From Epithemia pelagica (lineage: Eukaryota; Protista; Bacillariophyta), in assembly GCA_946965045.2 (NCBI GenBank), contig OX337228.1, positions 6,758,001 to 6,822,000 of the forward strand: 64,000 bases of DNA, in the 5' to 3' direction. Below the pieces are notes generated by a model, which did no database searches, had not been told where the DNA came from, and saw nothing but the letters and a program-made list of their open reading frames with translations. Shown here in pieces: positions 1,408 through 42,748 of this stretch (position 1 is its first letter; the number at the start of each line of letters is the position of its first letter). A program made the translations under genes and the position numbers.

Positions 1408-2883
1408 ATGGCTTCCTCATCATTCTCGATAAACCATAGAACCACTACACCAACGTCGGTGATCACGTCCTTGGAAGACACACTTACCCGTTTGGATGAG
1501 TATGAGCTTCCAGAAGACTTCAAGTTGGATAAACCACCGCATCACGGAGATGAAAAGAAAGAAGATAATGTTCCCGCTCTTCTGGAACGATACGAACGTT
1601 TGCGTGAAGGCTACCTCAAAAGCCAAATCACCCATGGTGCATTGGAGCACCTGAAGACTCATGGTTGGGATACTCTTCCCAGCGATGGCTCCGAGGACCT
1701 TCCCACTCTAGAGGAAAGTCATCGACAAATGACCCGATCTTTGGAAGAGACGGCCCAGCAAATGATATCAGTGCAACAGGAGTTACAGACGGACTACCGC
1801 TTGCTGCAGCATCGAAAGGAAGAATTGCGTGAACTGTTGCACGACTTTCAATGCAAAGGCACTATGGATGACAATGACTATTCTTTTTCTTCAGAGTTTC
1901 AAAATTCACTTCTCGCTCAAGACGACGAGGAGTTCGACGAAGAAACTATCCAACGTGGATTGGCCGAACAAGAGGAATTGATGTTTACTCTCCATAAACG
2001 AAAGGCGGAGTTGCAGTCAAACCTTGAAGCATTACAGAAGGAGGCGGTAGCCATTGGGAAAGAAAATATGAAACTGGATGCTAAGTTGGCGTCGAAAGAA
2101 GACACGGAAGTCCTTGAAAAAGAAAATGAACGACTTCAACAGCAATTGAACCAACTCTGTACTATCAAGTCAGAATATAGCCATCGTCGACTTCTTCTAG
2201 AAGAGCTATCCGGTATCAAAATCGAGTCAATTGAGGAAGAAAAGATAAAGGAGGACCATGTTCTTGTCCACGTGAAACTCCTTCTTCTCCAAAAATATAA
2301 ACTCCAGGCGACTCTCGAGTCTCATCATCGCCAGCGTATTCGTATTGTGAACGCGGAGTTTGTCAGTGATTCGAACGAAGAAAACCTGTACCTACCACCA
2401 CTGAATGACCTGATCCCCAGTGCTCAAGACTTTTGTCCCGGAATTCTTCAGCCTCACAATCAAAGTAACCAAAGCGCTGGATTTCGTTTCCTTGTTCATC
2501 AAGCCCTAGGTCGCCTTGAAACCTATAAAATGCGCCACGAAGAAGTTTTGCAACTTCGAGAATTTTGCCTAGCGGAGGTATGCCGAAATAAATCAGACCC
2601 GGAAGACCACTTGTTTCAAAAGGTTGTGTGTGTAATGCCTTGGAAAAACACTGAGGTAACGGCAGTGCTCAGAGTCACTCCAGATTGTCCTTGTGTACCT
2701 GGGAGTATCTTTGTTGAGAGTATTTCTTGTCCTCAAGAGACACTTTCTCATTTCCAGTCTCGACTGCAATCGGAGCAAGGAGAATATTCGTCAGCCCTGA
2801 AACTTGCCAAGTACATTCAAGAAGCTCTTGATTCCGGAGAATGGGCAAAACCTGTTGACGCACCCACTGGAATGATGTCGTAA
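1408..2883 (+). CDS. Coiled-coil protein with C-terminal RWD-like region (possible Zwint/Sos7-type kinetochore protein)
   Basis: 491-aa uninterrupted ORF with a long E/L/Q heptad region (about aa 100-265), followed by an alternating strand/helix C-terminus (LPPLNDLI...FRFLVHQALGRL). The family call is inference. Confidence 0.7.
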   Translation: MASSSFSINHRTTTPTSVITSLEDTLTRLDEYELPEDFKLDKPPHHGDEKKEDNVPALLERYERLREGYLKSQITHGALEHLKTHGWDTLPSDGSEDLPTLEESHRQMTRSLEETAQQMISVQQELQTDYRLLQHRKEELRELLHDFQCKGTMDDNDYSFSSEFQNSLLAQDDEEFDEETIQRGLAEQEELMFTLHKRKAELQSNLEALQKEAVAIGKENMKLDAKLASKEDTEVLEKENERLQQQLNQLCTIKSEYSHRRLLLEELSGIKIESIEEEKIKEDHVLVHVKLLLLQKYKLQATLESHHRQRIRIVNAEFVSDSNEENLYLPPLNDLIPSAQDFCPGILQPHNQSNQSAGFRFLVHQALGRLETYKMRHEEVLQLREFCLAEVCRNKSDPEDHLFQKVVCVMPWKNTEVTAVLRVTPDCPCVPGSIFVESISCPQETLSHFQSRLQSEQGEYSSALKLAKYIQEALDSGEWAKPVDAPTGMMS

Positions 2884-3167
2884 ACAAGAAAACCGTGGGA
2901 AAGGGATGTGAGATCCATTGGCATGAAACATCATTGTTGCTGCGGCTTAGGTTGGTCCATTGTAAATGCATTTTCCATGAGACAGAAGCAATTGGCTTGC
3001 TTGCTGTCCTCCTGTGCGACCATTTTCTCGATGGTAGTGTTGCATGTATGCGAAAGAGCTGCACCAGAGCAGTTTTCAGTACTCCTAGGAATTGCCGTTT
3101 ATTCTTCAAACGACTTGGATATCTTTCTGTTGTGCATTTGCTGCCAAAGATTCGTATAATAGTACTC

Positions 3168-5296
3168 CTAGTAACATCTTCGCTGCACAGAATTGTTGGG
3201 GATTTTTTTCCTTGGGAATTTTACTGCGATATGCACAACGATGCAGGTCTTACTCGCAGGCCTGGAGCTTTCTTCATCGGTTTGCTCTCCTTCACGACAT
3301 ACGACACATTTAGAGTTTTGATTCCTGAAAATTACCGTAGGGTTCATAGACAATCGAAGAAGATTTGTTCCAAACCGCCTCTTAGCGAGAACCACTTCGT
3401 CCATTGATACACATAAAGAAATTGATCCTCTCCACCCGTGTATCGTTGTAAACCTTTCGAAGCAATGGACTGCGTCAAAGATGCGTGCATACTTGCAAGG
3501 TGAGTCGCATCTTCTCCGATATCCGCCCCGACTTGGGCTGAAATCACCAACGAGAAGTAGGCATTGCTCAAGTTGCTTGCCAGAACACTGCTTATCAAGT
3601 TGGCCGGATGAAGGGTCTCTAAATCATTCAAGGCAATTTCCACAGTATCCGAAGCTCGGAACAAGGGCTCTTGATCTTCCGCCACCACGGAAGGTGTTTC
3701 CTTCCATGTTTTGGACCCAAACTCCCGTGTACGCTCCACTGCTAGACTCGATGCTGGTGGTGGTGATGGACATGGTTCAGGATTTGGAGCATCCATGGTG
3801 GACGACGACAAGGAGGATAAAAGTTCTTGAGCTTGCTGATCATCCGTCAAAGCGCTGCGTGGTTGACCGTACCAATCTATAAAGTCTTCCAAGTCGCATC
3901 CACGATTGGCCGCCTTGAAGTCACTCATGTCCGACAACAATTTATGATCGTTGCATCATGTTGGCCACTTCAACAAGTTCTAGAATATCCCTCTGAGACT
4001 ACATTGGTGAAAGCTTGGCGATGCCAAGATTTGAATGACCGTTCATTGCCGAACTCGAAGAGGTACTTTGTTGCCCCAACCATTGTCGTCGCTGAGCCAT
4101 CAAATCGTCTGTCAACGGCAAAGGGCGCTGCAGATAGGGTGCAAAGACTTGATGTCCGTTGCTTCGGATGCTTTGACCTTCGACGGGACAACGGGCCCCC
4201 ATGCGGGTGGTCATCCACGTCGGGACAGGCCCATTCGCCTCTGTTTGGCTGGGTTGGTCCGCGTCATAGTACTGTGTCATTTGCCCGGTATGAAAGGTCG
4301 CCACACTTGGGTCATCCGCAAACGTTCTGCGGGTTTTTCTCGTCGCCTGACTCGCCACGCTTCGAGATTCCCAATTCCCAATACCGAGATGCCTGGCTTG
4401 CAACACTTTGCGCGTCATGGTTGCTTCCGGGTGGAAATGCTTTGAATGTCTTTGTTCCTGCCCCCGGAGGCAAGCTCGTATCAAACCAATCTTCCGTCAA
4501 AGGGCTGTCCGGTTGCAAATGGTTTCGTATCGAAGGCCAATACAGATGAATCGTCCACTTCTGACTCAAACGGACCACCAGCATTCCCATCCCCGGCTTC
4601 CTCCGACGGTAAATTGTAGGTATCCTGAGGTGTGGGATGGTCACGGTACGAAGGAGAACATCGCCTCGCTTGGCTCCACTTTTGTTGTTGGAGGAATCGG
4701 CAGTGGGGACGGCCGGACAGTCCATTCGACCGGCCCCCGATCCACCGCGACAGGGCAACAGGAAGCGGGCAAAGTAGCCATCGCGATAGGCTGTCACTGC
4801 CATGACACAGACACACGAAGAGAGCCAAATTAAAACACACGACATGAGTTCCGCATCAATGTCCAAGAGGCTCTACCAATCCTTCAAGGAGAGTGTTGTC
4901 GATGATGACTGAAGTCCCGAGGCAACACCCACGAGAAACGGCAAGCCATCCTTGAACACCAAACACGACTCTGCCGCACCTGCCTCCAACACGACGGAAA
5001 TTGCAAAAAAAAAGGGCGATGCAGATTTGAAAACTCTGAAAGTAGATTTTCCCAGGAACGAGCGAGAATGAGAAACGAGCCTCCGGATTGTCGTTGTCGC
5101 AAGCCTGAAAGGGGTATTTTTTGGTAGCCGTGGGATCAAAACAGGGCAACATTTTGTGGCGCAATCGTTTGGGCAATCGTCGCAGCAAGGGTTTTTCGTG
5201 AGGATTAAAGTAGGGTTCGTGTTCTTCATCCTTATTGTCATAGTCTTCTTCTTCTTCTTCTTCGTTTTGTTGTTGTTGTTGTTGCGTCGTCGTCAT
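3168..5296 (-). pseudogene. Rab3 GTPase-activating protein catalytic subunit-like pseudogene
   Basis: Rab3GAP1 signatures APYLQRPLPLTDDL and LLSDMSDFKAANRGCDLEDFIDWY lie in different frames. They are separated by a TAG (3999-4001) and a TGA (3956-3958), with no AG acceptor between that TGA and the LLSDM codons. Further apparent frame changes occur near 4860, 4480 and 3400. The 5' limit is uncertain. Confidence 0.75.
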
Positions 5297-5575
5297 CGAC
5301 TTTCTCTTGTTCTTGTTCTTGTCGTCGTCGTCTTGGTTGTGGTTTCGTTGCAGAGGAGCCGTGTCCTCTTGGCTCCGCTGTCCTCGAGGTACGCCCGACG
5401 GTTGATTGTTGTGTAGTTGGGCTGTGCTGCTGCCCTCGACCCTCAACAATGCCCCGAATAAACCGACCCCGCTGCCTCGCACCTCTATGGTCAGATCGCC
5501 AAACAACACGAAACGCCAACAACACGCAACAATCCAACACGCACAAAAACAAATACGAACGAAATACGATTGACC

Positions 5576-6496
5576 ATGATGATGTGTGATTGTGATTACT
5601 GTTACGAAAAGATGATCAGCTCCGAATGGGCTCAGTTAGTTGCTCCTTTTGTGGTTCTCATACTGTGTTACGGTGCCGCTGATGTCCTCGATGAGGCGAA
5701 ACTAATAGTCCAACACCTGCTTCGGGTCATTTTCAACAAGAAAAGTCGTACTACAAGTAGCGAACACGCGGAGCTTCGACACGAACACGCGGAGCTTCGA
5801 CAGCTTCGACACGACAAAGCTCAGCTTCAACAACAGCTGGCCATTGCCGAAGCTAAGCAACAAAAAGAAATTGCAGCGAAGGATGGAGCCTACAAGAAGC
5901 TTCGTCGCGAGAATGCGGCGCTTCGAGTGAGGAAAGTGCGGTCTGGCCGAAAGCTTCGACGCGAAAATGCTCAGCTTCAACAACAGCTTGCTGTTGCCGA
6001 AGCAAAGCTTGCTGCGAAGCAACGCGAGACTCGTCGCCACAAGGATGGAGAGATCGAGATTCGCGATCGCGAGGAGGAGGTCGACGTCGACACTGTTGCT
6101 GTTCTGCCTTGCGAGTTCGACGCTGACTTGGACTTCCCTCCTCTCGCACTCGCAGACGATCTCGAGGACGACGAGGAGACCCCTCTAGTTCCAGTCGACC
6201 GTCCTGAGCCTGAACCCGCGCTCATCCCCGACAACGACGACGAGAACACTTTGGGGCACGACTCACCCCCTCGAAATTCCACCCCTCCTTCCCCCACCCC
6301 CACCCCCACTGAAAAAGATACCTCGCCTCAGATGGATGAGAATGCCCCCCAGAGCGTGATCGAGAGTTCCGCCGGCCCCGAGAACACCCCACATTTGGGC
6401 AGAATCCTTACTGTTGCCTACTCCAAAAAGGCACACGGAATGGTGCACGTTCGACGATCCGCTCGTCTTTTGTCAGCGGGTATGGGTAAAAAATAG
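5576..6496 (+). CDS. Orphan protein: N-terminal hydrophobic segment, coiled coil, acidic/Pro-rich linker, C-terminal RRSARL motif
   Basis: Intact ~306-codon ORF. WAQLVAPFVVLILCYGAA is hydrophobic. Internal DNA duplications are visible (gaacacgcggagcttcgac x2; gctcagcttcaacaacagct x2). It ends HVRRSARLLSAGMGKK and has an AC-rich leader at 5510-5570. Confidence 0.6.
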   Translation: MMMCDCDYCYEKMISSEWAQLVAPFVVLILCYGAADVLDEAKLIVQHLLRVIFNKKSRTTSSEHAELRHEHAELRQLRHDKAQLQQQLAIAEAKQQKEIAAKDGAYKKLRRENAALRVRKVRSGRKLRRENAQLQQQLAVAEAKLAAKQRETRRHKDGEIEIRDREEEVDVDTVAVLPCEFDADLDFPPLALADDLEDDEETPLVPVDRPEPEPALIPDNDDENTLGHDSPPRNSTPPSPTPTPTEKDTSPQMDENAPQSVIESSAGPENTPHLGRILTVAYSKKAHGMVHVRRSARLLSAGMGKK

Positions 6497-6536
6497 AAAA
6501 ACAGAAAAATAACATGTCGGTTGTCGGTTGCCAGTG

Positions 6537-6606
6537 GTACGTGCGCACGTTCGTGTCGGTTATGAATCTTTCCATACTCTCACTCTACCCCTTCTTCTGT
6601 TTCTAG
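6537..6606 (+). other. Putative 70-nt spliceosomal intron downstream of the 5576-6496 stop codon
   Basis: GTACGT donor (the same hexamer is used by several introns in this window), CTCAC branch-like site at ~6579, pyrimidine tract and TTCTAG acceptor. Confidence 0.5.
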
Positions 6607-6675
6607 CGATTGCAAAATTCTACTCCTACTCCTACATCAGCTGAGTCTAGCTCGAGTCCTTGTCGGAGATGTCCT

Positions 6676-6738
6676 TGTTGGTTTGTTGGTTTGTTGGTTT
6701 GTTGGTGTGTTGGTTGTCGGTGTGTTGGTTGTCGGTGT
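6676..6738 (+). repeat. GT-rich minisatellite (TTGTTGGT-type units grading into tgtgttggttgtcgg x2)
   Basis: Read directly; lies immediately 5' of the hairpin array. Confidence 0.75.
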
Positions 6739-6741
6739 TAT

Positions 6742-7085
6742 CACAAAACCCTGGTGGCACGAGGACTTTGTCCTTGTGTCATCAGGTATGGCATGGAGAC
6801 TTCGGTCTCTGTGCCATTTGGGAAGAGTGCCATAGTTGCCCCTGGAGAATCCATTGATTCCTCCAGGCTTCCCAAATTTCACAAAATCCTGGTGGCACGA
6901 GGACTTTGTCCTTGTGTCACCAGGTATGACATGGAGACTTCGGTCTCTGTGCCATCCCAAAATCCTGGTGGTACGAGGACTTTGTCCTTGTGTCACCAGG
7001 TATGGCATGGAGACTTCGGTCTCTGTGCCATTCGGGAAGAGTGCCATAGTTGCCCCTGGAGAATCCATTGATTCCTCCGCTTCCC
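6742..7085 (+). repeat. Modular hairpin array A-B-A-A-B' (candidate structured RNA or element terminus)
   Basis: Module A occurs at 6750-6817, 6888-6955 and 6964-7031. It is a 17-bp stem with a TTT loop plus a 13-bp stem with a c(TTCG)g loop. Module B occurs at 6818-6875 and 7032-7085. It is an outer gggaag/cttccc stem enclosing the hairpin cctggag-aatc-catt-gatt-c-ctccagg (3' arm shortened in the second copy). Confidence 0.9.
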
Positions 7086-7284
7086 TACCCGCTGTATTTA
7101 AGTGTTGGGTTGATCGATAACGAGTGGATTAGTGTTTCGGCTAAAATGTTTCTATATAACATGTAGTGGTAACAATAGCAAGTGGAACATTTGAACATGC
7201 ACGACAACATAGCTGACTAGTGATTCCTAGGAGTAGTCGACAATCAGAGAGGATAAATGGTAATTGCTGTTTAAGTGGCTGAAG

Positions 7285-7625
7285 CTACTTCATGTGCTTC
7301 TTTGTGAGCTTTCTTGCCTTCCCTACACCAGCGCGACCCTTCTTTTTCTCCTCTGCCTCTTCACTTTCGCTGGACTGTTCCGCAGCATGGTCCCCGCCGC
7401 CAAAAGATCCCGTGACGCGTCGTCGTCGTTGAGGTCGTGTTTTCCCAAGGTCGCATTCCTCAATGTCATCTTCTTCTTCGTTTGCTGGGTCCTCCTCATC
7501 CCGGGTGGTTGTCGTAGTCACTTGTTGTTGTTGCTGCTGCAGCAGACGCCGCCGTCGTTGGGGTGGACCGCTGCTTGTGCTTGTACTTGTTTGTGCGAGG
7601 CTTGCCGCTTCTTGCTCTTGGTTTG
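7285..7625 (-). pseudogene. C-terminal fragment of an unidentified low-complexity protein gene, lacking its 5' part
   Basis: The minus frame reads as typical diatom low-complexity protein (QQQQQQVTTTTTRDEEDPANEEEDD...KARKLTKKHMK*). It runs directly into the antisense of the PP4R1-like fragment, with no start or promoter space. Confidence 0.45.
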
Positions 7626-7626
7626 G

Positions 7627-9062
7627 GCTGCCGAAATGAGAGTCTATTGTGCCTACAGTTTTCCAGCCGTCGTGCTCTTGTTGGGGGCCGAAAATTGGAT
7701 GGGCGCCCTGTTGAATCCGAGTTATGCCGAAGAAGATGATGACGAGGAAGAAGTGGATGAAAATGGCAACCCCATTGAGGATGGTGGAGTCGTTCCCAAG
7801 ACAAGGACGGTCGCCTCGGATCCACCCCTTCCCGTCGAGCGGTGTTTGGCCAGTTCGCTCCATACCGTGGCTCACATTTTGGGACCCGAAATTGCCGTGG
7901 CGGATATCTTGCCCGTGTTTACGGATTATTTTTGCGAGATTCCGACGACACCGTTCGACTCAATATTATTGGAGGATTTCCCACCTTTTTGGGCATTTTG
8001 CCTACGACGCAGCATCGGACTGATTTGGTTTTGGCCTGGAGCCGTTTCATGCACGGCGAAGATTGTTTGGGAGCCAAGAAACGATCGGCCACCAATCCGT
8101 TGGTCTTGAATTGGCGCCAACGCGATTTCCTGGCCCGGAGTTTGCCGCTTGCCACCCGAATTGATTCATGCCATGTTTGGCCCATTTGTCAACAATTGAT
8201 CTTTGATTCTGTCAGTCTCATCCGAGATGATGATGTCCTGTGAACCATTCCCATTATGTTCAAAGTGGACACACCTGATACCATTGCGACCAAGTGGAAT
8301 GGGAGAGCCAACGCGGGCGGCAGCGCGAAGAAAAAGTCTTCTCTCATGTCCTCCTCCAACTTCTCTTCCAAGACAGCCGTTTTGGAAATTGTCACGTGGT
8401 TTTAGTACTGAAACTAGGGGCTCCAACAAACAACAATGGCAGCAACAACACCAGCAACACAAGCAATAGTAGCAGTGCTCAGGCACTTCGTAAATCCGTC
8501 TCATCAGTGAGTACGGGTGGTTCAAATGTGGCCATCAATTGTTTTGTCGCTACATTGGATTGTCCTTGCGGTTAAACGAAGAAATTCGAGCCAGTGGCAA
8601 AAAGGATCTAGCGGCAGCCTTGGGGGGGAACCCTTTGCCAGTGTCTTTTGCGGAAACTCCACATAATCGATTGGTGACCTCCACGATAGTACTCGTAGTA
8701 AGGGAAACTTGATGAGGGAGCATCTCTTCGATCAAGCGTGTTGGTCATCTGTTGGTTTGGTCACAGGAAAAGCTCGCCGACTCGTTTCTTCAGGAAACGT
8801 GGCCCAGCAAGAAGGCCTGTTTTTGACATTCCTCCCGTAGTCGTGACAACATAAGTGCTTTGATTTGGCCTCTCAGTCTCCGGAATTGATGATGAGCAAC
8901 GTTCCTCAGGTCCAGGATCTTCTGCTGATTCTACCACTAGATATCGAACATAATGATAAGGAAGTACATTGCTGGAACGTAAATGTTTCCTCTGCGGGGG
9001 AAAAGACCGTATACGCGAGCAGCGACATCGCCCTCATCATGTCGATTCGTCTCATCGTCTAA
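7627..9062 (+). pseudogene. PP4R1-like (protein phosphatase 4 regulatory subunit 1) HEAT-repeat pseudogene, 5'-truncated
   Basis: YCAYSFPAVVLLLGAENW, CLASSLHTVAHILG, LRDSDDTVRLNII and NWRQRDFLA match the C-terminal HEAT repeats of PP4R1. Lesions: frameshift at the T-run 7929-7933, TGA at 8241-8243 and TAG at 8403-8405. The 3' limit is uncertain. Confidence 0.8.
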
Positions 9063-9530
9063 GTACTTGGTTGGATCTTTTTGTTCGCTCAGGGTGTGTA
9101 TCTTGCATGCCGTCGAATTGCTCCGATGTACTTGATGAGTCACTGCTGGAGTATGTGTTGTCATCCCATTCATCGTAGATACTCTTGAACTTTATTGAAT
9201 ACATTTCTTGGGAGATGAGAGCGGGTACTTCAGCTACGTTCGGAATCATGTCTTGTTGGTTCCGCAACAGTCGTTCGATGTCTCTTCTAGATTATTTTTT
9301 GTGAGAACGGGTCCTCCTTTACGTTTATGAGTCTTGGGTCTTCCGTCTTGTGTAGCATGTTGATCCCGTGATCGGCAATAATATTTGACGTCCTTGCTCG
9401 CGAGTCATGTTGAGAATCGAGCGACTGCAAACTACGTCTACTACACGTATATGTATGTAGGGCTAGTGAATGTCCAATTTCAATTTGAGATGATATTTCT
9501 ATGGCGTCGTTCATCGAACTCATTGAACGT

Positions 9531-10750
9531 TCAAGTGCTCTTGAGCAACTTGGCCTCTCGATTCTTCCGTGCCGTTGCTTCTTCGTCTGTCTCCATTCGT
9601 CCACTACTGTATCCACCCTGAGTTCGGTCCAACAAATCCTCAGTATCGTAGGCTCTCGCCGCCTTTTCTTTTCGATTCAAGGCCCTCTTGGCTTCCATCT
9701 CCTTGCGCAACCAATATTCTGCAATGCTCAACATTTTTGCGGGATGCTGTTCAGCTTTCAATTTTTGATACACATCGAGGTCCTCCATTCGACCTTGCCA
9801 GCCACAACTTCCCTTATCGGTGAGGAAAAACAAATGAGAAGCCCAATCATCCAATCCATCTGATAAAGCATTATAAGCGACCAAGACAAGATTGAGTTTC
9901 GTTCGTAAAAGCCAATGATCATGACAGTGTGTGCTTACCAAAAATGTGAGTGGCATAAATGATTGTCGCACGGCGTACATCAGACTCTTTGACCAACCAG
10001 CGCAAGAGATCTTGTCGGACGCAAACGTCCAAGCTCGTAGTGATTTCATCCAAGAGCAGAATCTTGAATGGACGAATCAGACCCAGCAAGATCTGAACTC
10101 GCCGACGCTGACCATCCGAAAGTTGGTGCATCCGCCAGTCCAAATCAATTCCGAGCATATCCACTAATTCATCACGACGTTCGGGATACGACGCTTGCAA
10201 TCGTTCCATCATGTTCCGAACCGCAATGTCCGCCATAAGAGGAACCGCGTTGCCCACAAAGGACACATTGCGCATACCCCAGTCACAATCCAAGCAAGCT
10301 CTGTGAAAATTCAGTCGAGTGTCGTGAAAGGCATTCAAGCCAAGTACTCGGACCGACTGGTCCATTCCATTTTGTACATTGTTGCTGCTGGTCAAGTGAC
10401 GTCCCGCTAGAACTCGAAGCAAGGTGGATTTGCCTTATCAAAACAAAGCACAAACACCATTTCAAAACAGAATCACCAAAGTCAGAATGCCTGTCGATCG
10501 AGACGTCATAACAGCTGGTCAATATCCTCTGGTATCATTTACCTGATCCATTCGCACCAATCAGTAAGCATCGCGATCCTGTCGTCAGTTCCAGGTTCAG
10601 CTTTTGAAGCACCATATTGTTGTTGTACTCGCTGACAATGGATGTTCCACTGTCACTGCTCTTGTAACAAAAGGTCAGATTTTTCACCTCAATGGCCTTT
10701 TCGCCATACTCGGGAAGTGGTGGTAGGGGCTTGGGGGTAACTCCATTCAT
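9531..10750 (-). CDS. Soluble ABC ATPase, CAF16/ABCI-like (3 exons: 10750-10543, 10433-9939, 9859-9531)
   Basis: Walker A GANGSGKST is rebuilt across intron 10434-10542. Also present: signature LSDGQRRRV, Walker B ILLLDE, and YATHIFDGL rebuilt across intron 9860-9938. No TM domain. Confidence 0.9.
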
Positions 10751-22128: not shown

Positions 22129-23898
22129 TCAAAAATCCTCTAGACCGTAGGGATCAAAAGTGTCCAGATTGTCGTCTTCCAGCTCAAAAACAGCAGCCAG
22201 TTTGCTGTTGACTTGAACATTTTCTTCACCGTAGAGCAACTCGTAGAGATCACGTCGTTCCTCCCGTAGCCGAGAGACGGAACCATTCTCATCTCCCTTT
22301 TTCCGTTTGGGGCTTGATTCCTCTTCTTCTTCTTTTTCCTGTGTTGGTGGAGCGGTCGTTGTTGTTGCTACAATTGGTTCCTTTTCAGACTGTGTAGTTT
22401 CTTGGTTGTTCATTGTAGTGGTCGATACCGATGGAGCACTTCGTTGTTTCGGTTGAAGTGGGACCACTTCCACAGCTTTGCTTTTCTCGGTTACCTGGGT
22501 TCCTGATGTTGAAGTTTTTCTCTTGGTCGTTGGCTTGGACTGTTTCTGTTTCCGAGGGCCAGACAGGGGTTGAATGACGCGGATCGTGGATTCCAGATCG
22601 TCGTCACTGCTGGCTGATAATGTCGAAAGGGAACTTTGTTCGGCAGATACAGAGACCGTCTTGGATGACGGTTTTTTCCTCGTGCTTGGTGATTTTGTCG
22701 ACGGTGGTCTTCTCTTGCGCGGTTTGGGTTGTACCATGTCGGCTTCTGTCCTCCTGGCCAATGAATCGGTGATTTTTTTCCGGTATTCACTATCTTGCCA
22801 TCTTAATTTCATGGCCTCACTAATCTTTTCCCGATGAGCAGGATCCAGCTGCTGCTTCGAGTAGCTTCGTTTGGTCATTTTCGCCATCATGGATTGTCGG
22901 AATTCCGGATCCTGCCACTTCTTTTTCAGGGTTTCGCTGATTTTTTGACGAATCTCCTCTCGTGAATTGAGGACAGAGGTTTTGTTCTGCATGTTGGAAC
23001 GATAATCAGCATCGTTCGCCCATCTCTTTTTGAGCGATTCCGATATTTTCCGTCGCGTTTCTTCACTATGTACAAATCCACGACGAACCTTGTCGGGGTC
23101 CACCTTTTTGCGACGAATCTCTCCTCGGGCATGTTTTTCTTTGAGAATTTTGGAAATCTTTTGGCGCGTTTCCATGGTTGGTGTGTAGCCTCCGTTGGCG
23201 GTCTTTCTCGCTCGTCGTTCGGCGTCTCGTTTCCGGCGTTCCGCCTTTTTTTGTTCTTGGTATTCTTGTTCCGTCAACCCCAAATCCTGGAGCTTTTGTA
23301 AGAAACGCTCCCGGTTTTTGGCTCGGACACCGGCCGCTATTTTCGCCTTTTCTTCCTCGGATCGTTGCTTTCCCTTATTCCAGGGAGTCTTTCCCTTGTT
23401 GGCCGCCGAAATTTTGGCCTTGGAGGCCACGGTATGACTGTATCCACCCTTTTCGGTCGGCATGCGGACATCGGCGGCCATGACGGACGAAAAGGAAGTT
23501 CCAGCAACTCCATGGAACAGTTCATGTTCCTCCAGAATCGGAAGGCCATTCTTATCATTCACTGTAACATTGGGGGCGTAATAGACGTCCATGTGATGAC
23601 CATGATGAGCGTCGACATCCTGCAGAGCCAAGCCCCAAGCAGTCCTTGGGGAAAACGACGACTTGGGCGCCAGTGGTACAGACTTTGGTACATTGGACAG
23701 GCATCTCATGGAAAACACTCGTTGACTCCCCACACAATCAAACCCATGTGTGCCTCGAGCGGTCCACAAAAGGGAGATGAGGGTCGCAGGAAGGAACATT
23801 AGTAGGACACCTGGTTGTTCCATGGTTCTGTACCACGCCCTACCGGGTTGGCTTTGCATTTTCCTCCTCGTTCGTCGTTTGTGTGGTCGATCTAGCAT
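22129..23898 (-). CDS. NUMOD3-repeat nucleic-acid-binding protein, probably organelle-targeted
   Basis: About six motifs of the H/xSEETRxKISxxxK type, plus TPWNKGK; N-terminal hydrophobic signal ending THG-F. The start could be a later ATG. Confidence 0.8.
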   Translation of the reverse strand: MLDRPHKRRTRRKMQSQPGRAWYRTMEQPGVLLMFLPATLISLLWTARGTHGFDCVGSQRVFSMRCLSNVPKSVPLAPKSSFSPRTAWGLALQDVDAHHGHHMDVYYAPNVTVNDKNGLPILEEHELFHGVAGTSFSSVMAADVRMPTEKGGYSHTVASKAKISAANKGKTPWNKGKQRSEEEKAKIAAGVRAKNRERFLQKLQDLGLTEQEYQEQKKAERRKRDAERRARKTANGGYTPTMETRQKISKILKEKHARGEIRRKKVDPDKVRRGFVHSEETRRKISESLKKRWANDADYRSNMQNKTSVLNSREEIRQKISETLKKKWQDPEFRQSMMAKMTKRSYSKQQLDPAHREKISEAMKLRWQDSEYRKKITDSLARRTEADMVQPKPRKRRPPSTKSPSTRKKPSSKTVSVSAEQSSLSTLSASSDDDLESTIRVIQPLSGPRKQKQSKPTTKRKTSTSGTQVTEKSKAVEVVPLQPKQRSAPSVSTTTMNNQETTQSEKEPIVATTTTAPPTQEKEEEEESSPKRKKGDENGSVSRLREERRDLYELLYGEENVQVNSKLAAVFELEDDNLDTFDPYGLEDF

Positions 23899-29933: not shown

Positions 29934-32900
29934 TCAATTCGAAGGATACTTGATATCTTCTTCCGTCAGACTTTCGGCGTATTTCATCCAGGGATGCTCG
30001 AGGGCCTCCGAAGCGGAAGGTCTCTTGTCTGGATCGATCGTCAGAAGCTTTTGAATGAAATCTGTAAAAACTGCTTGTTGCTTCTCATCTTTCGAGAGTT
30101 TGGCATTGGAATTGTACCTTCTCATTAAGGACGACGAAAACCCTAACCTGGACGATAGACAGGTCACCTTTGGTTGGAAAAGATCCATGTATTTCTTCCT
30201 TCGGTCACTGGAGGTGTCATCGTCATCGTCGCTTGTCTCACTCTGCGAATCTTCATGTTCGTGCTCATCGGAAGCTAGTTTTTCGAATAACAAGCCGCAT
30301 TTCGTGAAAAACCGACCACTCTGTCTTCCTTGAGCAATCATATGAGACGGGAATGTGCCACAAATGGCTTCAATGCGGCTCAACATGGAAACAATGGAAT
30401 CGTTCTGGAATGTGACTTCACCTGTGTACATCTCGGCTACAACACAGCCCAAGGACCACACGTCGATTCGTCCGTCGTAGGGCAAACCCAGAATAACTTC
30501 GGGTGCCCGATATGATCTGGACTGAATGTAGGATGATTGACGGTCCGTCAAAAAGCAAGAACTTCCAAAGTCAATCACTTTTACTTGTGCTCGACTGTAA
30601 CTGCTCAAGAGAATATTCTCTGGCTTGACATCCGAATGCACCAGACCCAACTTATGTACAAAGTCAAGAGCAATCAGAATCTGTCTGGTCAAATAGCACA
30701 AACGGGGTATTGTAAAGTAAGGTTCTTCGTTGCTGTCAATAATGAACTTTCCGAATTCGAAAAGATTCTGTCGAAGCAGTTCCGTCACAATGATCAGGTG
30801 CTCCCTGTGATAAAAGAATGTCTTCATCTCGACAATGTTCATCTCCTGGCACATGCCTGTCTGACGCAAAAGCTCCAATATCTTGATTTCATCCAGCGAT
30901 TGGTCGAAAAAGTCTTTGGTATTCTTGATCACTTTCAGACAAACTTCATCATGACCATCTGGTCCATCTCCATCCGAGCTCAAATCCACGCATCGATAGG
31001 CTGTACTAAACGCAGCACTACCTAGTTCTCCTTCCACTAAGTATTGTCCGGCAACAACGTTTCCTGCCTCCAATACCAGATCTTTGGTCGGCTCAAAGCC
31101 CGTCACGTGCGACTTGTATATAATGGGCAGGTGAAAGTATTCCAAGTCGCCCATCTCGCCACGGCCGGTGGATTTGACACCCGGGAAACAAGCCAGTGGT
31201 TGTTCTTTGGGGTAAATACGTGCTCGTGTCGCAATTTCATCTTCCAGCCGGCTTTTCTTGGCGGCTTCTTTACTAGCCAATTCTTGCTTATCCAGCAGAT
31301 CTTCGGCTTCTTTCAAATCTCGTTCAAAGGCTTCATCGTTCTCATCGTCATCGTGTGCGCGCTTTTTCGCAGTGGCGATCATGCGCTCAAAGGCATATTC
31401 CACGGCGGCTAGCTGTAAGGTCGTTAATCGGATAATACGATAGCCCGCTTCATCGGGATTGCTCTCATCCCAGTCTGGTCGTTTGTCCACAAGCTTGAGA
31501 GATTGCACCATGTTCGAGTCCAACAAATGGGCGCACAAGGTTTTCATGAGTTCGTCCGTCTCCTCGTCGACTTCATGGGAGGAGTATTTGTCCCCCGTTT
31601 CGTCGGCCAACGCTCCCGTTACCATGGAAACAGCGGCCGACAAGGAATCCAACAGGGACGGGGAGGTATAGGAATCTCGTTGTTGTTCCATATCGCCTTC
31701 GAGCACAACTCCCGTCGTGCCCCCGGCGTTTTTACTGAGGGGGCCCAGAACTCCATCGAGTTCCGAGTGGTTGTTTTGATTTTCATCGTCATTTTCAATA
31801 TCACAAAATGCGTCGTCATCCTCGTCGTCGTCGTCGTCAATATCGGCATCCTCGTCTTCATCTTCTGCTTCTTCTTCTACTACGTCGTCTTGCACGTCTG
31901 ACCCTCGGATATCCGCCGAGCCACTTTCCTTGTCATCATAGTCGTCGTCGTCGTCCTGGTCCTCGTTTCGTTGTTTATCGGGGTCGGGGCTGAGAACACT
32001 TCGCACGCGTCGATCAATGACATCGTCTTTTTTGGACCGTACGGCCCGTTCTTCTTGCAAACGCACCATTTTGTCCAAGTCGTCTTCGGGTGGCGTTTCG
32101 TCCCGAGGCGGCGGCTGAGCCGCCCCCACGAGGGAGGTGTCAATGGTCAAGTTGGTTTTGGGGCGCGTAGTACTACTGGTGGTGCCTACAGCCGGTACGG
32201 CGGCTTCGGTGGGGGGTTGGAGCAGGCGGGCATTGTGATTGGGCGACGACGACCCCAAGGTGGACGTGGAAGGGGCACCGAGCAAATCGGTCATGGCACG
32301 GACCAAGGCATTTTCGCCATTCGTCGTACTGTCCAATACTTCAACGACGGCCTGTGGTCGAGTCTCCTCGGGACTGGCCGTCTTTTTTTCTTCTCCTCGA
32401 CTGGTCGTAGTAGTCGTCGTAGTAGGAGGAGGAGGATGCGTGGTGGGCCAGTGCGGAGCCGTGGTGGGTGGTGGTGATTGGGAGTCGTCGTGTGGGGTCC
32501 GCGTGGGTTCGGCCAAGGCGTGCAAGGATGCTGGTTCTCCTCCTCCTCCTCCCCGCGATCCTCTCCCTTGACTGTGGGCCCGTTCCAAAATGGCCAACAA
32601 GACTCGTTCGACCCCGCGATGCACCTCTTGCTCGGTGGTATTCGTAGTCGTATTATGACTACTCAGTGTCGTGGAAGGATTCATGGACGAGACTTGGGAG
32701 GGTGCCGCGGAGGTGGACAACAAGGTGGGCAGTCGATCGTCGTCGTCGGGTTCCGGTTCCTTGGTTCGAAAGGTGGTGGAGGAGGGGACCGATCGTGACG
32801 TGAGGGCTCCTCCTCCTTCCGCGTGGTCGTCGTCCAGGGTCGTGGTTGTGGTGGTGGGGTGCCCCAAGGACGCCAGGGCCGCCTCGGGTTGTGAGGCGTG

Positions 32901-33854
32901 GTGCAGCCATGGTTGTGGTCCCACGACAACATCGCTGTGGCTACTGCTGCTAGGGACGGCTGGTGCTTCGAGCGGCGTACTATACTTGTCTTCTTGTTTG
33001 AGTTCGGCCAGTCGGCTGGCATAGCGGGCCATGCGTTCTTGCCGTTGTTTGCGGCGGGCTTCAATTTCCGCTTGATAGGCTTCGCCCAAGGCCACGGCCG
33101 ACGGAGTCGTGGCAGTTGCCAAAGCCTCCTCGCTGGAGGATGGATCCATGGCGGATTCCGCCGCCAACAGGACCGTGGCCTTAGCAGTGTCTTCCTGTGA
33201 TGGTTCGTCCCGCAATTGCAAAATCCGATCGGCTTCGGGCGGTGTGCGAGACCGAGGATTCATTCTCGTCCACGACGACGACGAGGATGCTGCTGCTGCT
33301 TTGGACGAGGACTGGGGCGAACTGGGAGGATGGAGCAACATGCCATTGGGAGACGAAAAGGCGGCAGTCGTCGTCGTGTCACCGGCAGCCCGCGGCGTAC
33401 GATGTTTGCGCAAGAGATCGAGGGCTTCTTTAATGGCATCTTCGTAGGGATTGGAGACTTCGGAAGAAGCCGTGGAATGGTGGTGGTGATTGTGGGTAGT
33501 AGTAGTAGAATTGTGAGCATGATGCGTATAGTGCGTGGGAGTGGTCCCATCTCTCCGCGATTCGGCTTCCACGGCGGCTGGATGGCTGTTGCTGCCTCCG
33601 AGAATTTCGAGGCGTTGTTGTTCGTGTTCTTGCAAACTTTTTAAAATCTCGACCGAATCTCGATTCGTCGTGTCGTGTTGGGGTGGTGGTTGCTGCTGCT
33701 GTGGTTGGGGAGACAGAGTCGCTGTCGGTGGTGGTTGCACAAAGTCTTGGGCATTGTAAAAGCTAAAGCGCGTTTGGGTGTGATGCGAGCTCACCGAGGC
33801 ACTGTCCTTGTTGGTGGCGACACCATCACTGGCCGCCGATGCCGTGTCGTTCAT
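29934..33854 (-). CDS. DYRK-family kinase, DYRKP-like, with ~900-aa disordered N-terminus
   Basis: TGFEPTKD, LGSAAFSTA, KVIKNTKDFFDQSLDEIK, HSDVKPEN, YIQSRSYRAPEVILGLPY; single 1306-aa ORF. Confidence 0.92.
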   Translation of the reverse strand: MNDTASAASDGVATNKDSASVSSHHTQTRFSFYNAQDFVQPPPTATLSPQPQQQQPPPQHDTTNRDSVEILKSLQEHEQQRLEILGGSNSHPAAVEAESRRDGTTPTHYTHHAHNSTTTTHNHHHHSTASSEVSNPYEDAIKEALDLLRKHRTPRAAGDTTTTAAFSSPNGMLLHPPSSPQSSSKAAAASSSSSWTRMNPRSRTPPEADRILQLRDEPSQEDTAKATVLLAAESAMDPSSSEEALATATTPSAVALGEAYQAEIEARRKQRQERMARYASRLAELKQEDKYSTPLEAPAVPSSSSHSDVVVGPQPWLHHASQPEAALASLGHPTTTTTTLDDDHAEGGGALTSRSVPSSTTFRTKEPEPDDDDRLPTLLSTSAAPSQVSSMNPSTTLSSHNTTTNTTEQEVHRGVERVLLAILERAHSQGRGSRGGGGGEPASLHALAEPTRTPHDDSQSPPPTTAPHWPTTHPPPPTTTTTTTSRGEEKKTASPEETRPQAVVEVLDSTTNGENALVRAMTDLLGAPSTSTLGSSSPNHNARLLQPPTEAAVPAVGTTSSTTRPKTNLTIDTSLVGAAQPPPRDETPPEDDLDKMVRLQEERAVRSKKDDVIDRRVRSVLSPDPDKQRNEDQDDDDDYDDKESGSADIRGSDVQDDVVEEEAEDEDEDADIDDDDDEDDDAFCDIENDDENQNNHSELDGVLGPLSKNAGGTTGVVLEGDMEQQRDSYTSPSLLDSLSAAVSMVTGALADETGDKYSSHEVDEETDELMKTLCAHLLDSNMVQSLKLVDKRPDWDESNPDEAGYRIIRLTTLQLAAVEYAFERMIATAKKRAHDDDENDEAFERDLKEAEDLLDKQELASKEAAKKSRLEDEIATRARIYPKEQPLACFPGVKSTGRGEMGDLEYFHLPIIYKSHVTGFEPTKDLVLEAGNVVAGQYLVEGELGSAAFSTAYRCVDLSSDGDGPDGHDEVCLKVIKNTKDFFDQSLDEIKILELLRQTGMCQEMNIVEMKTFFYHREHLIIVTELLRQNLFEFGKFIIDSNEEPYFTIPRLCYLTRQILIALDFVHKLGLVHSDVKPENILLSSYSRAQVKVIDFGSSCFLTDRQSSYIQSRSYRAPEVILGLPYDGRIDVWSLGCVVAEMYTGEVTFQNDSIVSMLSRIEAICGTFPSHMIAQGRQSGRFFTKCGLLFEKLASDEHEHEDSQSETSDDDDDTSSDRRKKYMDLFQPKVTCLSSRLGFSSSLMRRYNSNAKLSKDEKQQAVFTDFIQKLLTIDPDKRPSASEALEHPWMKYAESLTEEDIKYPSN

Positions 33855-34662
33855 GTTGATTCAATCAAGGAAACTGGGACCTTTTAAACGTATTGGACGG
33901 ACCGACTTGTGCCCTCTTGTTGTCCAACGAGAGAAGGGATCGATCGAGCCGTAGAGTAGATTGCACCAACCAACGGGGTCTCCCACCAAACACCAAATCA
34001 AACAACGGATCCAATTCCTCTCACTGAAACACGAACGGGGCCTTTCCTTCGATGATCACAACACTCCACCAATCCAGAGACAAATGAATCCACAGAGAAC
34101 ACACACAAGAGAGAGAGAGCGAGAACAGGGTCCACAACAAAGGTGGCAATGAGATTGCTATGTTGTAATAATTGATTCTGGGAGAGGAGAGACGATGAAG
34201 AGAGAGAAATTGGTGCAGTGTGGTGGTGTGTGCGTTTTGGTACCGTCGCGCGCCGGTCCTGTGCCCGGCAGTCCTCGTACGTTAGAAATACATAGAAGAA
34301 CGCCGGCGCATGGATCCGATGGGATACTCTGGCACAGTCAGTACAGGCCGATTTTTGGATCGATTCAAAAGAAAAGAAATCAATGACGACACATGCTTTG
34401 GCGCCGCGGGCGCTCGAGTCTTGGATGAAACCGAGAAAATAGAAAAAATCCAACTCTTGAAAAATGAAAAAAAGGCAAACTGGAAAATGACCACAGACAC
34501 AGAAAGCGGCAATGGCATTCGCTCTCCCATCGAAACTCATCATCATCATCTTTTTCGTTGGTCGTTGGATGCATCTCCTCCTCCAAAAGAGTCACAAACA
34601 AACCAAAACAAGAGAGAGACTCGATCGGATTCCGGAACCACAACAACAACATCAACAACAGA

Positions 34663-42575: not shown

Positions 42576-42662
42576 CTCGTGATAGCTCAGTTGGTAGAGC
42601 GGTGGACTGTAGAGACATCAGCAACCATCCATCGGTCACTGGTTCGATTCCGGTTCGCGAGA
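42576..42662 (+). tRNA. tRNA-Tyr(GTA) with 14-nt intron (42613-42626)
   Basis: Acceptor stem CTCGTGA/TCGCGAG, D arm GCTCAGTTGGTAGAGC, anticodon arm GTGGA-CTGTAG...A-TCCAT, T arm GGTTCGATTCC. Confidence 0.95.
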
Positions 42663-42748
42663 CGTTTTGTCCAATTATCATTTTGCGTGGAATGACGTGT
42701 ACTTTTTTCTCACTGTAAATCTAGATTTGCCACCGAAGTCAAAAGACA

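What the first reader, a model, noticed from the sequence alone, without database searches (positions are those of the whole stretch)
3168..9062. A ~6-kb island of decayed housekeeping genes wrapped around an intact orphan ORF and hairpin cassette
Seen: two normally conserved genes (Rab3GAP1-like, PP4R1-like) carry many stops and frameshifts. Elsewhere in the window very long ORFs (1,306 and 2,675 codons) are clean, which argues against general assembly error. Between them sits an undamaged cassette: ORF 5576-6496, a putative intron, a GT minisatellite and the hairpin array. Inference: the cassette is a previously undescribed non-autonomous element or chromatin-tethering module whose insertion accompanied or caused local silencing and decay, or the region is a degenerating homeolog or duplicate. 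I found no TSD, TIR, transposase or RT.
Basis: partly seen in the sequence, partly recalled or inferred. Interest (0 to 1): 0.75.

Follow-up and report, generated by a model that had tools for sequence, protein, structure and literature searches.

The report
Multicopy ORF-hairpin cassette between pseudogene fragments
The "orphan" gene is one of about 50 copies of a repeated gene-plus-RNA-hairpin unit in an uncharacterised microbial eukaryote, and here it lies between old, truncated leftovers of two ordinary genes; the leftovers are unremarkable, while the repeated unit, whose protein carries a nucleosome-binding-like motif, is new and undescribed.

Summary
The sequence features are real, but both halves of the reading need correction.

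**Flanking genes.** They are truncated fragments, not whole genes in decay.
- Rab3GAP1 homology covers only 4370-3470 on the minus strand. That is positions 851-1128 of a 1309-position profile.
- PP4R1 homology starts abruptly at 7630, and at least 415 N-terminal residues are missing.
- Each fragment carries true nonsense and frameshift lesions that no intron explains.
- The Rab3GAP1 piece has the same ORF length and stop on a second, 97-98% identical contig. The PP4R1 frameshift recurs on a third contig. The lesions are therefore old and are not consensus errors.

**The ORF (5576-6496).** It is not an orphan.
- There are 22 clusters and about 50 sequences at 64-96% identity, on at least 16 contigs of the same assembly.
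- At least one other copy is followed by the same GT minisatellite and hairpins.
- At least 744 bp upstream of the ORF is also repeated.
- The protein has a hydrophobic N-terminal helix, a long coiled coil and a disordered acidic tail. RRSARLLSA, close to the HMGN/Dsup nucleosome motif, is invariant in 22 of 23 representatives.
- The hairpins pair perfectly only on the ORF strand.

No transposon hallmark was found.

The parts
3470..4370 (-). Rab3GAP1-like pseudogene fragment (catalytic-subunit domain region). In-frame TAG at 4001-3999 and one extra base near 3944, which puts TAA 3944-3942 in the old frame.
   Evidence: Pfam PF13890 on two pieces. tblastn of 1676-2018-aa relatives matches only their residues about 1105-1405 and 1469-1771. 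A profile of 17 full-length relatives matches only positions 851-1128 of 1309. The same ORF piece (194 aa, same stop, 98% identical) is on the 673,095-bp contig.
3168..3404 (-). Possible degenerate C-terminal tail of the Rab3GAP1-like fragment, in another frame. Not significant.
   Evidence: Only a resemblance by eye to the C-terminus of P0042. No hit in the profile search at E<10.
4371..4832 (.). Unassigned stretch between the Rab3GAP1 fragment and the demonstrated left part of the repeat.
   Evidence: No significant match to Rab3GAP1 relatives and no Pfam hit.
4833..5575 (.). Upstream part of the repeated unit (5' flank and promoter side of the ORF). Not conserved as a reading frame.
   Evidence: Antisense ORFs from other copies (P0211 on contig 624,503; P0212 on contig 673,095) align to 5577-4833 at about 80% identity, with indels that change frame. 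P0213 on contig 1,186,851 shares only 5380-5240.
5576..6496 (+). ORF-A, 306 aa. Hydrophobic helix (residues 20-38), coiled coil (to residue 156), disordered acidic and Pro-rich tail. Member of a family of about 50 sequences.
   Evidence: family; AlphaFold: helix 17-156, remainder pLDDT<50; Kyte-Doolittle 1.94 over a 19-residue window; region conservation.
6452..6478 (+). RRSARLLSA motif (residues 293-301), HMGN/Dsup-like.
   Evidence: RRSARL is present in 22 of 23 family representatives; the exception is frameshifted upstream. Motif definition from PMC12487698. By itself it is expected about 1.4 times per 5-Maa proteome.
6537..6606 (+). Putative 70-nt GT-AG intron. It lies in the 3' UTR of this copy and inside the ORF of full-length family members.
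   Evidence: Splice-site consensus read. Family members read ...KITCRLSVAS up to the donor, and P0023 reads through to ...IAKF.SYSYIS. No transcript evidence; the joined model was not built or searched.
6675..6738 (+). GT-rich minisatellite (8/15-nt period).
   Evidence: TRF. It is translated within the read-through ORF of another copy, P0025.
6750..7088 (+). Hairpin array. Three A hairpins (17 bp, UUU loop), three B hairpins (13 bp, or 12 in B2; UUCG loop), two C units.
   Evidence: All six distinct G:U sites pair only on the + strand. No Rfam family. The same A-B units are read through in P0025.
7288..7625 (-). Charged, low-complexity reading frame of unknown origin, forming the tail of a called ORF that continues antisense into the PP4R1 fragment.
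   Evidence: P0031 (7288-7863) and its 97% identical, gap-free partner P0032 on the 673,095-bp contig. No Pfam hit.
7630..8683 (+). PP4R1-like pseudogene fragment, 5'-truncated. Frameshift at about 7929, TGA at 8241-8243, further frame changes and stops after 8400.
   Evidence: tblastn of P0034, P0036, P0037 and P0038 and of the C-terminal part of P0037. Residues 1-415 of P0038 (HEAT repeats) have no match in the window. P0033 on contig 936,940 shares the 7929 frameshift.
8684..9062 (+). Possible further remnant of the PP4R1-like C-terminus. Not verified.
   Evidence: No alignment at E<1. The intact, spliced ABC ATPase gene begins beyond about 9290.

Best explanation
The island is a relic locus, not two genes silenced by an insertion. 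It holds one copy of a lineage-specific, dispersed repeat unit. That unit comprises at least 0.74 kb of upstream sequence, ORF-A, a putative small intron, a GT minisatellite and an array of RNA hairpins in the 3' UTR; it spans at least 4833-7088. The unit sits between 5'-truncated, already dead fragments of a Rab3GAP1-type and a PP4R1-type gene.

**Shown**
- The fragments are truncated and carry true lesions.
- The Rab3GAP1 piece has the same boundaries on a second, 97-98% identical contig (haplotype or homeolog). The PP4R1 frameshift recurs on a third contig.
- The ORF has about 50 relatives. Where it can be seen, they carry the same downstream repeats and upstream sequence.

**Inferred**
- A deletion, or a partial duplication, removed the cassette-facing 5' parts of both genes. 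Working copies lie elsewhere, and the remnants drifted.
- ORF-A is kept open by selection. It encodes a membrane-anchored coiled-coil protein whose disordered tail contacts the nucleosome acidic patch through the RRSAR arginines.
- The perfectly paired hairpins act in the ORF-A transcript, in 3'-end formation, stability or processing.
- I cannot decide whether the unit spreads by transposition or by segmental duplication with gene conversion. I put these at roughly even odds.
For: **Truncation**
- The profile of 17 full-length Rab3GAP1 relatives matches only positions 851-1128 of 1309. tblastn agrees.
- PP4R1 homology begins at 7630, which is residue 416 of P0038.

**Lesions are real and old**
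- Aligned residues are contiguous across the frameshifts at about 3944 and about 7929, so no intron fits.
- P0187 on the 673,095-bp contig has the same 194-aa piece and the same stop. P0032 pairs with P0031.
- P0033 on contig 936,940 runs from the wrong PP4R1 frame into the true one, gap-free against the window across about 7929, exactly as the window does.

**Repeat family**
- 22 clusters and about 50 sequences. At least 8 copies on the window's own 624,503-bp contig, at least 10 on the 673,095-bp contig, and at least 16 contig sizes in all.
- P0025 reads through into the minisatellite and the A-B hairpins.
- P0211 and P0212 share 5577-4833.

**Constraint on the ORF**
- 20 of 23 representatives are open over about 300 codons at up to about 30% divergence. 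The shared upstream DNA, by contrast, has frame-changing indels.
- RRSARL is present in 22 of 23.

**Protein architecture:**

**Hairpin strandedness:** + strand -189.5 against - strand -156.1 kcal/mol, and 6 of 6 G:U sites favour the + strand.

**Motif:** PMC12487698.
Against: - No DNA of any other copy could be fetched, so the unit's ends, target-site duplications and flanks are unknown.
- No intact Rab3GAP1 or PP4R1 gene of this organism was found. The best full-length Rab3GAP1 relatives are only 57-59% identical and are probably from other species.
- P0001 has no partner of 97% or more on the 673,095-bp contig, although other copies pair at about 99% between the two contigs. It also has four private substitutions, two of them at otherwise invariant positions. 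This particular copy may therefore be drifting too, and its open frame could be luck: P is about 0.04 at the flanks' lesion density of roughly 3.6 per kb.
- RRSARL alone is expected about 1.4 times per proteome by chance, and no binding was tested.
- The sample of family members is biased toward open frames, because the collection holds called ORFs only.
Confidence: 0.6

Rival explanations
1. Gene-fragment capture. The whole island, or most of it, is a single mobile or transduced unit, and the Rab3GAP1 and PP4R1 pieces are host fragments it picked up. Possible routes are Pack-MULE or Helitron-like transduplication, or 3' transduction by read-through of a retroelement transcribed left to right.
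For: - The PP4R1 fragment exists in at least three places with a shared frameshift.
- The left extent of the repeat differs between copies: to 4833 or beyond in P0211/P0212, but only to about 5240 in P0213. This resembles variable 5' truncation.
- Fragments of unrelated genes in opposite orientations around a repeat are typical of capture. MULEs acquire host gene fragments and occur in diatoms (PMC6446971).
Against: - No inverted repeat longer than 33 nt was found within 2400-10200, and the longest are low-complexity runs. No transposase, RT or helicase domain was found.
- The Rab3GAP1 fragment is known only from the window and its partner contig.
- No cassette ORF was seen on the 936,940-bp contig that carries the third PP4R1 fragment.
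- Both fragments point their 3' ends outward toward intact neighbour genes, as expected for local remnants.
- A retained intron, if real, argues against retrotransposition.
Confidence: 0.2
2. The cassette inserted into the shared upstream region of two intact, divergently transcribed genes and silenced them, and they then decayed in place by point mutations.
For: - Both gene remnants face the cassette with their 5' sides, in head-to-head geometry.
- The ORF is open while its flanks are not.
- Neither cassette ORF (P0001, P0030) has a close partner on the other contig, whereas both flanks do. The cassette could therefore be a later or haplotype-specific arrival.
Against: - About 65-80% of Rab3GAP1 and at least 415 residues of PP4R1 are simply absent. 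Point decay cannot remove them while the remaining parts stay 44-59% identical to relatives.
- The lesions are shared with a contig on which the cassette's presence is not shown, and with a third contig. If the cassette is haplotype-specific, it came after the decay.
Confidence: 0.07
3. Artefact. The stops and frameshifts are consensus or assembly errors in a locally poor region, such as collapsed haplotypes or homopolymer errors.
For: The frameshift at about 7929 lies beside a T5 run, and the extra base near 3944 beside an A-run.
Against: - An independently assembled contig has the same ORF piece with the same length and stop.
- A third contig shares the PP4R1 frameshift.
- Errors cannot explain the missing N-terminal halves.
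- Surrounding ORFs of up to 2,675 codons are clean.
Confidence: 0.03
4. The cassette is an ordinary host multigene family expanded by segmental duplication and homogenised by gene conversion. Its position next to pseudogene fragments is coincidental.
For: - Close copies cluster on the same contig pair. Four of the seven nearest relatives, counting P0001 itself, are on contig 624,503 and three on 673,095.
- Copies pair at about 99% between the two contigs, like alleles.
- The coiled coil of P0001 is a chimera of two family variants, which implies recombination between copies.
- There are no transposon hallmarks.
Against: - Copies lie on at least 16 contigs, several per contig but tens of kb apart; only one falls in this 64-kb window.
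- The non-coding hairpins and the upstream DNA travel with the ORF.
- This rival overlaps the best explanation, which leaves the mode of spread open.
Confidence: 0.1

Closest known systems
HMGN proteins and tardigrade Dsup (nucleosome acidic-patch binders with the RRSARLSA-type motif)
   Same: ORF-A carries RRSARLLSA in a disordered region, invariant across the family. The RRSAR core, which includes both arginines that contact the acidic patch in HMGN2 and Dsup, is identical (PMC12487698). Acidic and lysine-rich disordered segments are nearby, as in HMGNs.
   Different: There is no sequence similarity outside the motif, and one extra Leu lies within it. ORF-A has an N-terminal hydrophobic helix and a 140-residue coiled coil. 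It is multicopy and comes from a protist. HMGNs are vertebrate-only, and the paper names Dsup as the only non-vertebrate protein known to bind nucleosomes this way. Binding was not tested, and the PDB sequence search with the tail found nothing.
Truncated duplicated pseudogenes, or gene remnants left by fractionation in a genome with homeologous or divergent haplotype contigs
   Same: The fragments have nonsense and frameshift lesions, lack large parts of the gene, share their lesions between copies, and sit among intact neighbour genes.
   Different: Parent genes were not found. Two unrelated fragments abut the same repeat with their truncated ends.
Gene-fragment-carrying transposons (Pack-MULEs, Helitrons) and LINE 3' transduction
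   Same: A repeat is associated with fragments of unrelated host genes. One fragment is present at another locus with the same lesion. The 5' extent varies between copies (PMC6446971).
   Different: No TIRs, no TSD, no transposase, RT or helicase, no poly(A) or CTRR end, and the boundaries are unknown.
LINE ORF1p-type proteins (coiled-coil, nucleic-acid-binding, about 300 aa) followed by a 3' UTR with stem-loops or microsatellites. This comparison rests on my own knowledge.
   Same: Similar size, a long coiled coil, a basic lysine-rich tail in most family members, and 3' repeats plus stem-loops on the transcript strand.
   Different: No RRM, CTD or zinc knuckle, no ORF2 in the window, a hydrophobic N-terminal helix, and a candidate intron.

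Membership tests
Rab3GAP1 (Rab3 GTPase-activating protein catalytic subunit) as an intact gene | Pfam Rab3-GTPase_cat domain present | tested here: met
   PF13890, split over two pieces. Profile positions 4-57 (E = 3e-5, 24.2 bits, just below the 26.1-bit cut-off) and 69-158 (E = 2.8e-15).
Rab3GAP1 (Rab3 GTPase-activating protein catalytic subunit) as an intact gene | Full-length architecture, including the conserved N-terminal region, in one uninterrupted or splice-able frame | tested here: not met
   Only profile positions 851-1128 of 1309 are matched. A TAG and a 1-nt frameshift lie inside contiguous homology.
PP4R1 (protein phosphatase 4 regulatory subunit 1) as an intact gene | Similarity to PP4R1-type proteins | tested here: met
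   44-51% identity to P0034 and P0036-P0038; P0037 is named PP4R1 by its source. The window pieces themselves have no Pfam hit.
PP4R1 (protein phosphatase 4 regulatory subunit 1) as an intact gene | N-terminal HEAT-repeat half present and frame intact | tested here: not met
   Residues 1-415 of P0038 (HEAT) have no match in the window. Frameshift at about 7929, TGA 8241-8243, and later frame changes.
HMGN-type nucleosome-binding proteins | RRSARLSA core motif | tested here: inconclusive
   RRSARLLSA: the RRSAR core is identical and there is one inserted Leu. Invariant in 22 of 23 members. The hexamer alone is expected about 1.4 times per proteome.
HMGN-type nucleosome-binding proteins | Sequence homology to HMGN outside the motif; small (about 100 aa) fully disordered protein | tested here: not met
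   No Pfam or PDB hit. 306 aa with a 140-residue helix.
HMGN-type nucleosome-binding proteins | Binds the nucleosome acidic patch | not testable with these tools
   Needs a nucleosome gel shift or cryo-EM with RRSAR mutants.
DNA transposon / Pack-MULE | Terminal inverted repeats (about 120 bp in diatom MULEs, PMC6446971) and a target-site duplication | tested here: not met
   The longest inverted repeats in 2400-10200 are 33 nt or less and are low-complexity. A TSD cannot be assessed without knowing the ends.
Autonomous transposon or retrotransposon | Transposase, integrase, RT, endonuclease or helicase domain | tested here: not met
   No such Pfam hit in any island ORF, nor in the flanking ORFs I scanned.
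Dispersed repeat family (operational definition) | Many copies at different loci that share coding and non-coding parts | tested here: met
   About 50 ORF sequences on at least 16 contigs. Downstream repeats are shared with P0025. The upstream 744 bp is shared with P0211/P0212.
Known structured RNA family (Rfam) | Match at or above the gathering score | tested here: not met
   The only hit is Proteo-phage-1 at 21 bits against a 42-bit threshold, E = 0.97. No tRNA in the array.

The most novel reading that the evidence does not exclude
ORF-A defines a new, protist-specific family of membrane-anchored coiled-coil proteins that tether chromatin through an HMGN/Dsup-type arginine-anchor motif. It is carried, with a transcript-strand hairpin array, on a new kind of mobile or self-duplicating cassette that lacks every known transposition enzyme and leaves truncated host genes at its borders.
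Probability: 0.15. Interest if true: 0.8.

Novelty: new variant of a known kind. Interest (0 to 1): 0.45.

Why it matters
The pseudogene fragments are routine genome debris.

The cassette is worth a second look for two reasons.

1. **The motif.** A recent structural paper (PMC12487698) states that Dsup is the only non-vertebrate protein known to use the HMGN motif, and it predicts 'an untapped realm' of such proteins. A family of about 50 members in a microbial eukaryote, with the motif invariant, gives a directly testable candidate far outside animals.
2. **The repeat unit.** A repeat with an open conserved ORF, a strand-specific array of perfect hairpins and no recognisable transposition machinery is either a new non-autonomous element or a rapidly expanding host gene family. 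Either would inform how such genomes generate and disperse new genes.

Tried and rejected
**Introns as the cause of the frame breaks: rejected.**
- Aligned residues are contiguous across about 3944 and about 7929.
- A candidate 68-nt intron around the TAG (4066-3999) would run into a stop.
- Real introns in this genome look different. The neighbouring ABC ATPase gene has clean GTAAG/GTAAAT...AG introns of about 80-105 nt.

**Codon-usage frame tracing:** too weak to map lesions.

**N-terminal Rab3GAP1 homology in 4371-5509:** I thought I saw it by eye. Profile and low-stringency BLAST searches do not support it.

**Searches that found nothing**
- Rfam, tRNA scan within the array, PHROGs (only non-significant coiled-coil noise).
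- PDB sequence searches.
- JGI metagenome contigs, with the family alignment and with a hairpin pattern.
- Viral contigs, with both.
- Full-text search for RRSARLL.

**Other steps**
- Fold search was not run. The model is one long helix plus disorder, so matches would be meaningless.
- One literature search was mis-set and uninformative.
I substituted exact cluster look-ups and word searches with ORFs that overlap the flanks.
ORF-A's putative second exon and the ABC gene's exons were only read in place.
- The contig is not human. It is gene-dense, has 70-105-nt introns, and its proteins are known only from an ENA assembly. 'Diatom-like' is my impression from the sequence style and was not tested.

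Full report
**Setting**

The window is gene-dense eukaryotic DNA of about 49% GC. It has long clean ORFs and ordinary eukaryotic neighbours: DnaJ, PHD-bromodomain, cyclophilin-RRM, triose-phosphate translocator and glutamate dehydrogenase. It is not human. Exact look-ups show that its ORFs are known only from an ENA assembly, on a 624,503-bp contig. Neighbour genes have 97-98% identical partners on a 673,095-bp contig, which is a second haplotype or homeolog. The gene calls in that collection are plain ORFs.

**Flank 1: Rab3GAP1-like, minus strand**

- Two pieces hit Pfam Rab3-GTPase_cat. Piece 3999-4484 matches profile positions 4-57, and piece 3344-3940 matches positions 69-158.
- The best full-length relatives found by the exhaustive search are 1676-2018 aa long and only 57-59% identical.
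- They align to the window only over their residues about 1105-1405 and 1469-1771, which is window 4370-3470.
- A profile of 17 full-length relatives matches only positions 851-1128 of 1309. Low-stringency searches found no N-terminal homology in 4371-5509.
- Inside the homology there is an in-frame TAG (4001-3999) and one extra base near 3944. That base lies between two blocks that are contiguous in all relatives (...MQR-P/S-KL-V/L-SDMS...), so it is a true frameshift and not an intron.
- The 673,095-bp contig has a called ORF of exactly the same 194 residues and the same stop, 98% identical. The break is therefore shared and is not a consensus error.

**Flank 2: PP4R1-like, plus strand**

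- Relatives include one that its source names protein phosphatase 4 regulatory subunit 1, and one with HEAT-repeat Pfam hits.
- They align from 7630 onward, which corresponds to residue 416 of P0038. The preceding 415 or more residues have no counterpart anywhere in the window.
- The frame changes at about 7929 with no intervening sequence. A TGA lies at 8241-8243 in the position of a conserved Trp. After about 8400 the trace continues weakly through further frame changes to about 8683.
- An ORF on a third contig (P0033, 936,940 bp) is collinear and gap-free with the window across 7929. It passes from the wrong frame into the true PP4R1 frame exactly as the window does, then shows one further 1-nt difference near 7965.
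- The frameshifted fragment therefore exists in at least two places, plus the partner contig, where P0032 covers 7288-7863 at 97% identity without gaps.

**What the flanks are**

They are truncated pseudogene fragments with their missing 5' sides toward the cassette. They are not whole housekeeping genes in decay. The island ends before about 9290. There an ABC ATPase gene on the minus strand is intact once two canonical introns are read.

**The cassette**

- *The family.* ORF 5576-6493 (P0001) has 22 related clusters, about 50 sequences, at 64-96% identity. All come from ENA contigs. At least 8 are on the window's own contig and at least 10 on its partner, and at least 16 contig sizes are represented in all. 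There is a sharp gap between the weakest relative (E = 7e-71) and nothing.
- *Where it was not found.* There are no relatives in JGI metagenome contigs or in viral contigs.
- *Conservation (A1).* The alignment shows a conserved Cys-rich, hydrophobic N-terminus with a second N-terminal variant. The coiled coil varies in repeat number. The acidic segment is highly conserved, and MVHVRRSARLLSAG is nearly invariant. Most members also have a lysine-rich tail.
- *This copy's subfamily.* The window copy belongs to a subfamily that ends early at a shared stop.
- *Recombination.* P0001's coiled coil is a chimera of the two variants, which implies recombination among copies.
- *Downstream.* One member (P0025, same contig) reads through into the translated GT minisatellite and the A-B hairpins. 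The downstream non-coding features therefore belong to the repeat.
- *Upstream.* Antisense ORFs from other copies (P0211, P0212) align to 5577-4833 at about 80% identity with frame-changing indels. The unit therefore reaches at least 744 bp upstream, and that part is not under coding constraint. A further copy (P0213) shares only 5380-5240.
- *Within this window.* The cassette is single-copy here.

**The protein**

AlphaFold with the family alignment gives one long helix (residues 17-156; pLDDT above 90 for about residues 71-150) and disorder from residue 157 onward. Residues 20-38 have a Kyte-Doolittle mean of 1.94, which is membrane-helix-like. The C-terminal half has 34 acidic residues and 20 Pro.

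RRSARL occurs in 22 of 23 representatives. RRSARLSA is the HMGN nucleosome-binding motif. Its arginines, and those of Dsup, anchor in the H2A-H2B acidic patch (PMC12487698). The hexamer alone would occur about 1.4 times per proteome by chance. The argument therefore rests on its invariance and context, and binding is untested. There are no Pfam, PHROG or PDB matches.

**The hairpins**

- The array is A-B-C-A-B-A-B-C.
- A is a 17-bp stem with a UUU loop. B is a 13-bp stem (12 in B2) with a UUCG loop.
- On the + strand, all three A stems and two of the three B stems pair fully, using 2-3 G:U pairs each; B2 has one mismatch. On the - strand the G:U pairs become mismatches. All six distinct G:U sites favour the + strand.
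- The whole array folds at -189.5 kcal/mol on the + strand and -156.1 on the - strand.
- This points to function, or at least selection, in the ORF-A transcript. No Rfam family matches.

**The intron**

Positions 6537-6606 have good donor, acceptor and pyrimidine-tract signals. In full-length members the frame runs up to the donor. There is no transcript evidence, and I did not build or search the joined product.

**Interpretation**

The best-supported account is a relic locus. A copy of a dispersed, lineage-specific repeat unit lies between two old gene remnants, both truncated on the side facing the unit.

- *Silencing by insertion followed by point decay.* This cannot explain the missing halves.
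- *Assembly error.* Excluded by the shared lesions.
- *Capture of host fragments by the element.* Still possible, given the third PP4R1 copy and the variable left extent. It lacks TIRs, TSDs and enzymes, and no cassette ORF was seen on the third contig.

**Open points**

- P0001 and the upstream ORF P0030 have no partner of 97% or more on the 673-kb contig. The flanks do have partners, and other copies pair at about 99% between the two contigs.
- P0001 has four private substitutions, two of them at otherwise invariant sites.
- The cassette may therefore be absent or broken in the partner island, and this copy may be drifting. At the flanks' lesion density of about 3.6 per kb, an open 918-nt frame has P of about 0.04 by chance.

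**Verdict**

The pseudogene fragments are ordinary. The cassette is a previously undescribed repeat and gene family with a testable chromatin-binding hypothesis.

Noticed in passing
window 9290-10750 (minus strand): An ABC-type ATPase gene (Pfam ABC_tran/AAA_21). It looks fragmented in ORF lists but is intact once two canonical introns are removed: GTAAAT...AAG at about 10541-10434, and GTAAGC...CAG at about 9938-9860. This shows the genome has short GT-AG introns and that ORF-based gene calls break such genes.
   Followed up: partly
family alignment A1 (P0001 residues 92-141; window 5849-5998): The 50-residue insert in P0001-type copies is the coiled coil of the other N-terminal variant (P0025, P0026, P0028). 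The window ORF is therefore a chimera, which indicates recombination or gene conversion among cassette copies.
   Followed up: partly
window 22132-23898 (minus strand): A 589-aa ORF with a NUMOD3 motif (E = 5.5e-18), a DNA-binding motif usually associated with homing endonucleases. This is unusual in a eukaryotic nuclear ORF.
   Followed up: no
window 42576-42663: The tRNA-Tyr (GTA) is 88 nt long and probably contains an intron.
   Followed up: no
window 7288-7625 (minus strand): A charged, low-complexity reading frame ends at 7288 and converges on the cassette's 3' end across an AT-rich spacer of about 200 bp. It looks like the 3' end of some gene, fused to antisense PP4R1 sequence. It is conserved at 97% on the partner contig.
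   Followed up: partly
protein P0213 (contig 1,186,851; not in the window): Next to another cassette copy, the divergent ORF is an open 301-aa protein with a C-terminal hydrophobic segment. It shares only its first 47 or so residues with window 5380-5240. Cassette copies may supply a 5' end or promoter to different neighbouring genes.
   Followed up: no
window 32001-34000 and 52001-56000: GC-rich stretches (0.54-0.58) with strong GC skew (+0.16, and -0.15 to -0.17). They lie at least partly within long ORFs (the 1,306- and 2,675-codon ORFs among them), probably in low-complexity coding regions.
   Followed up: no
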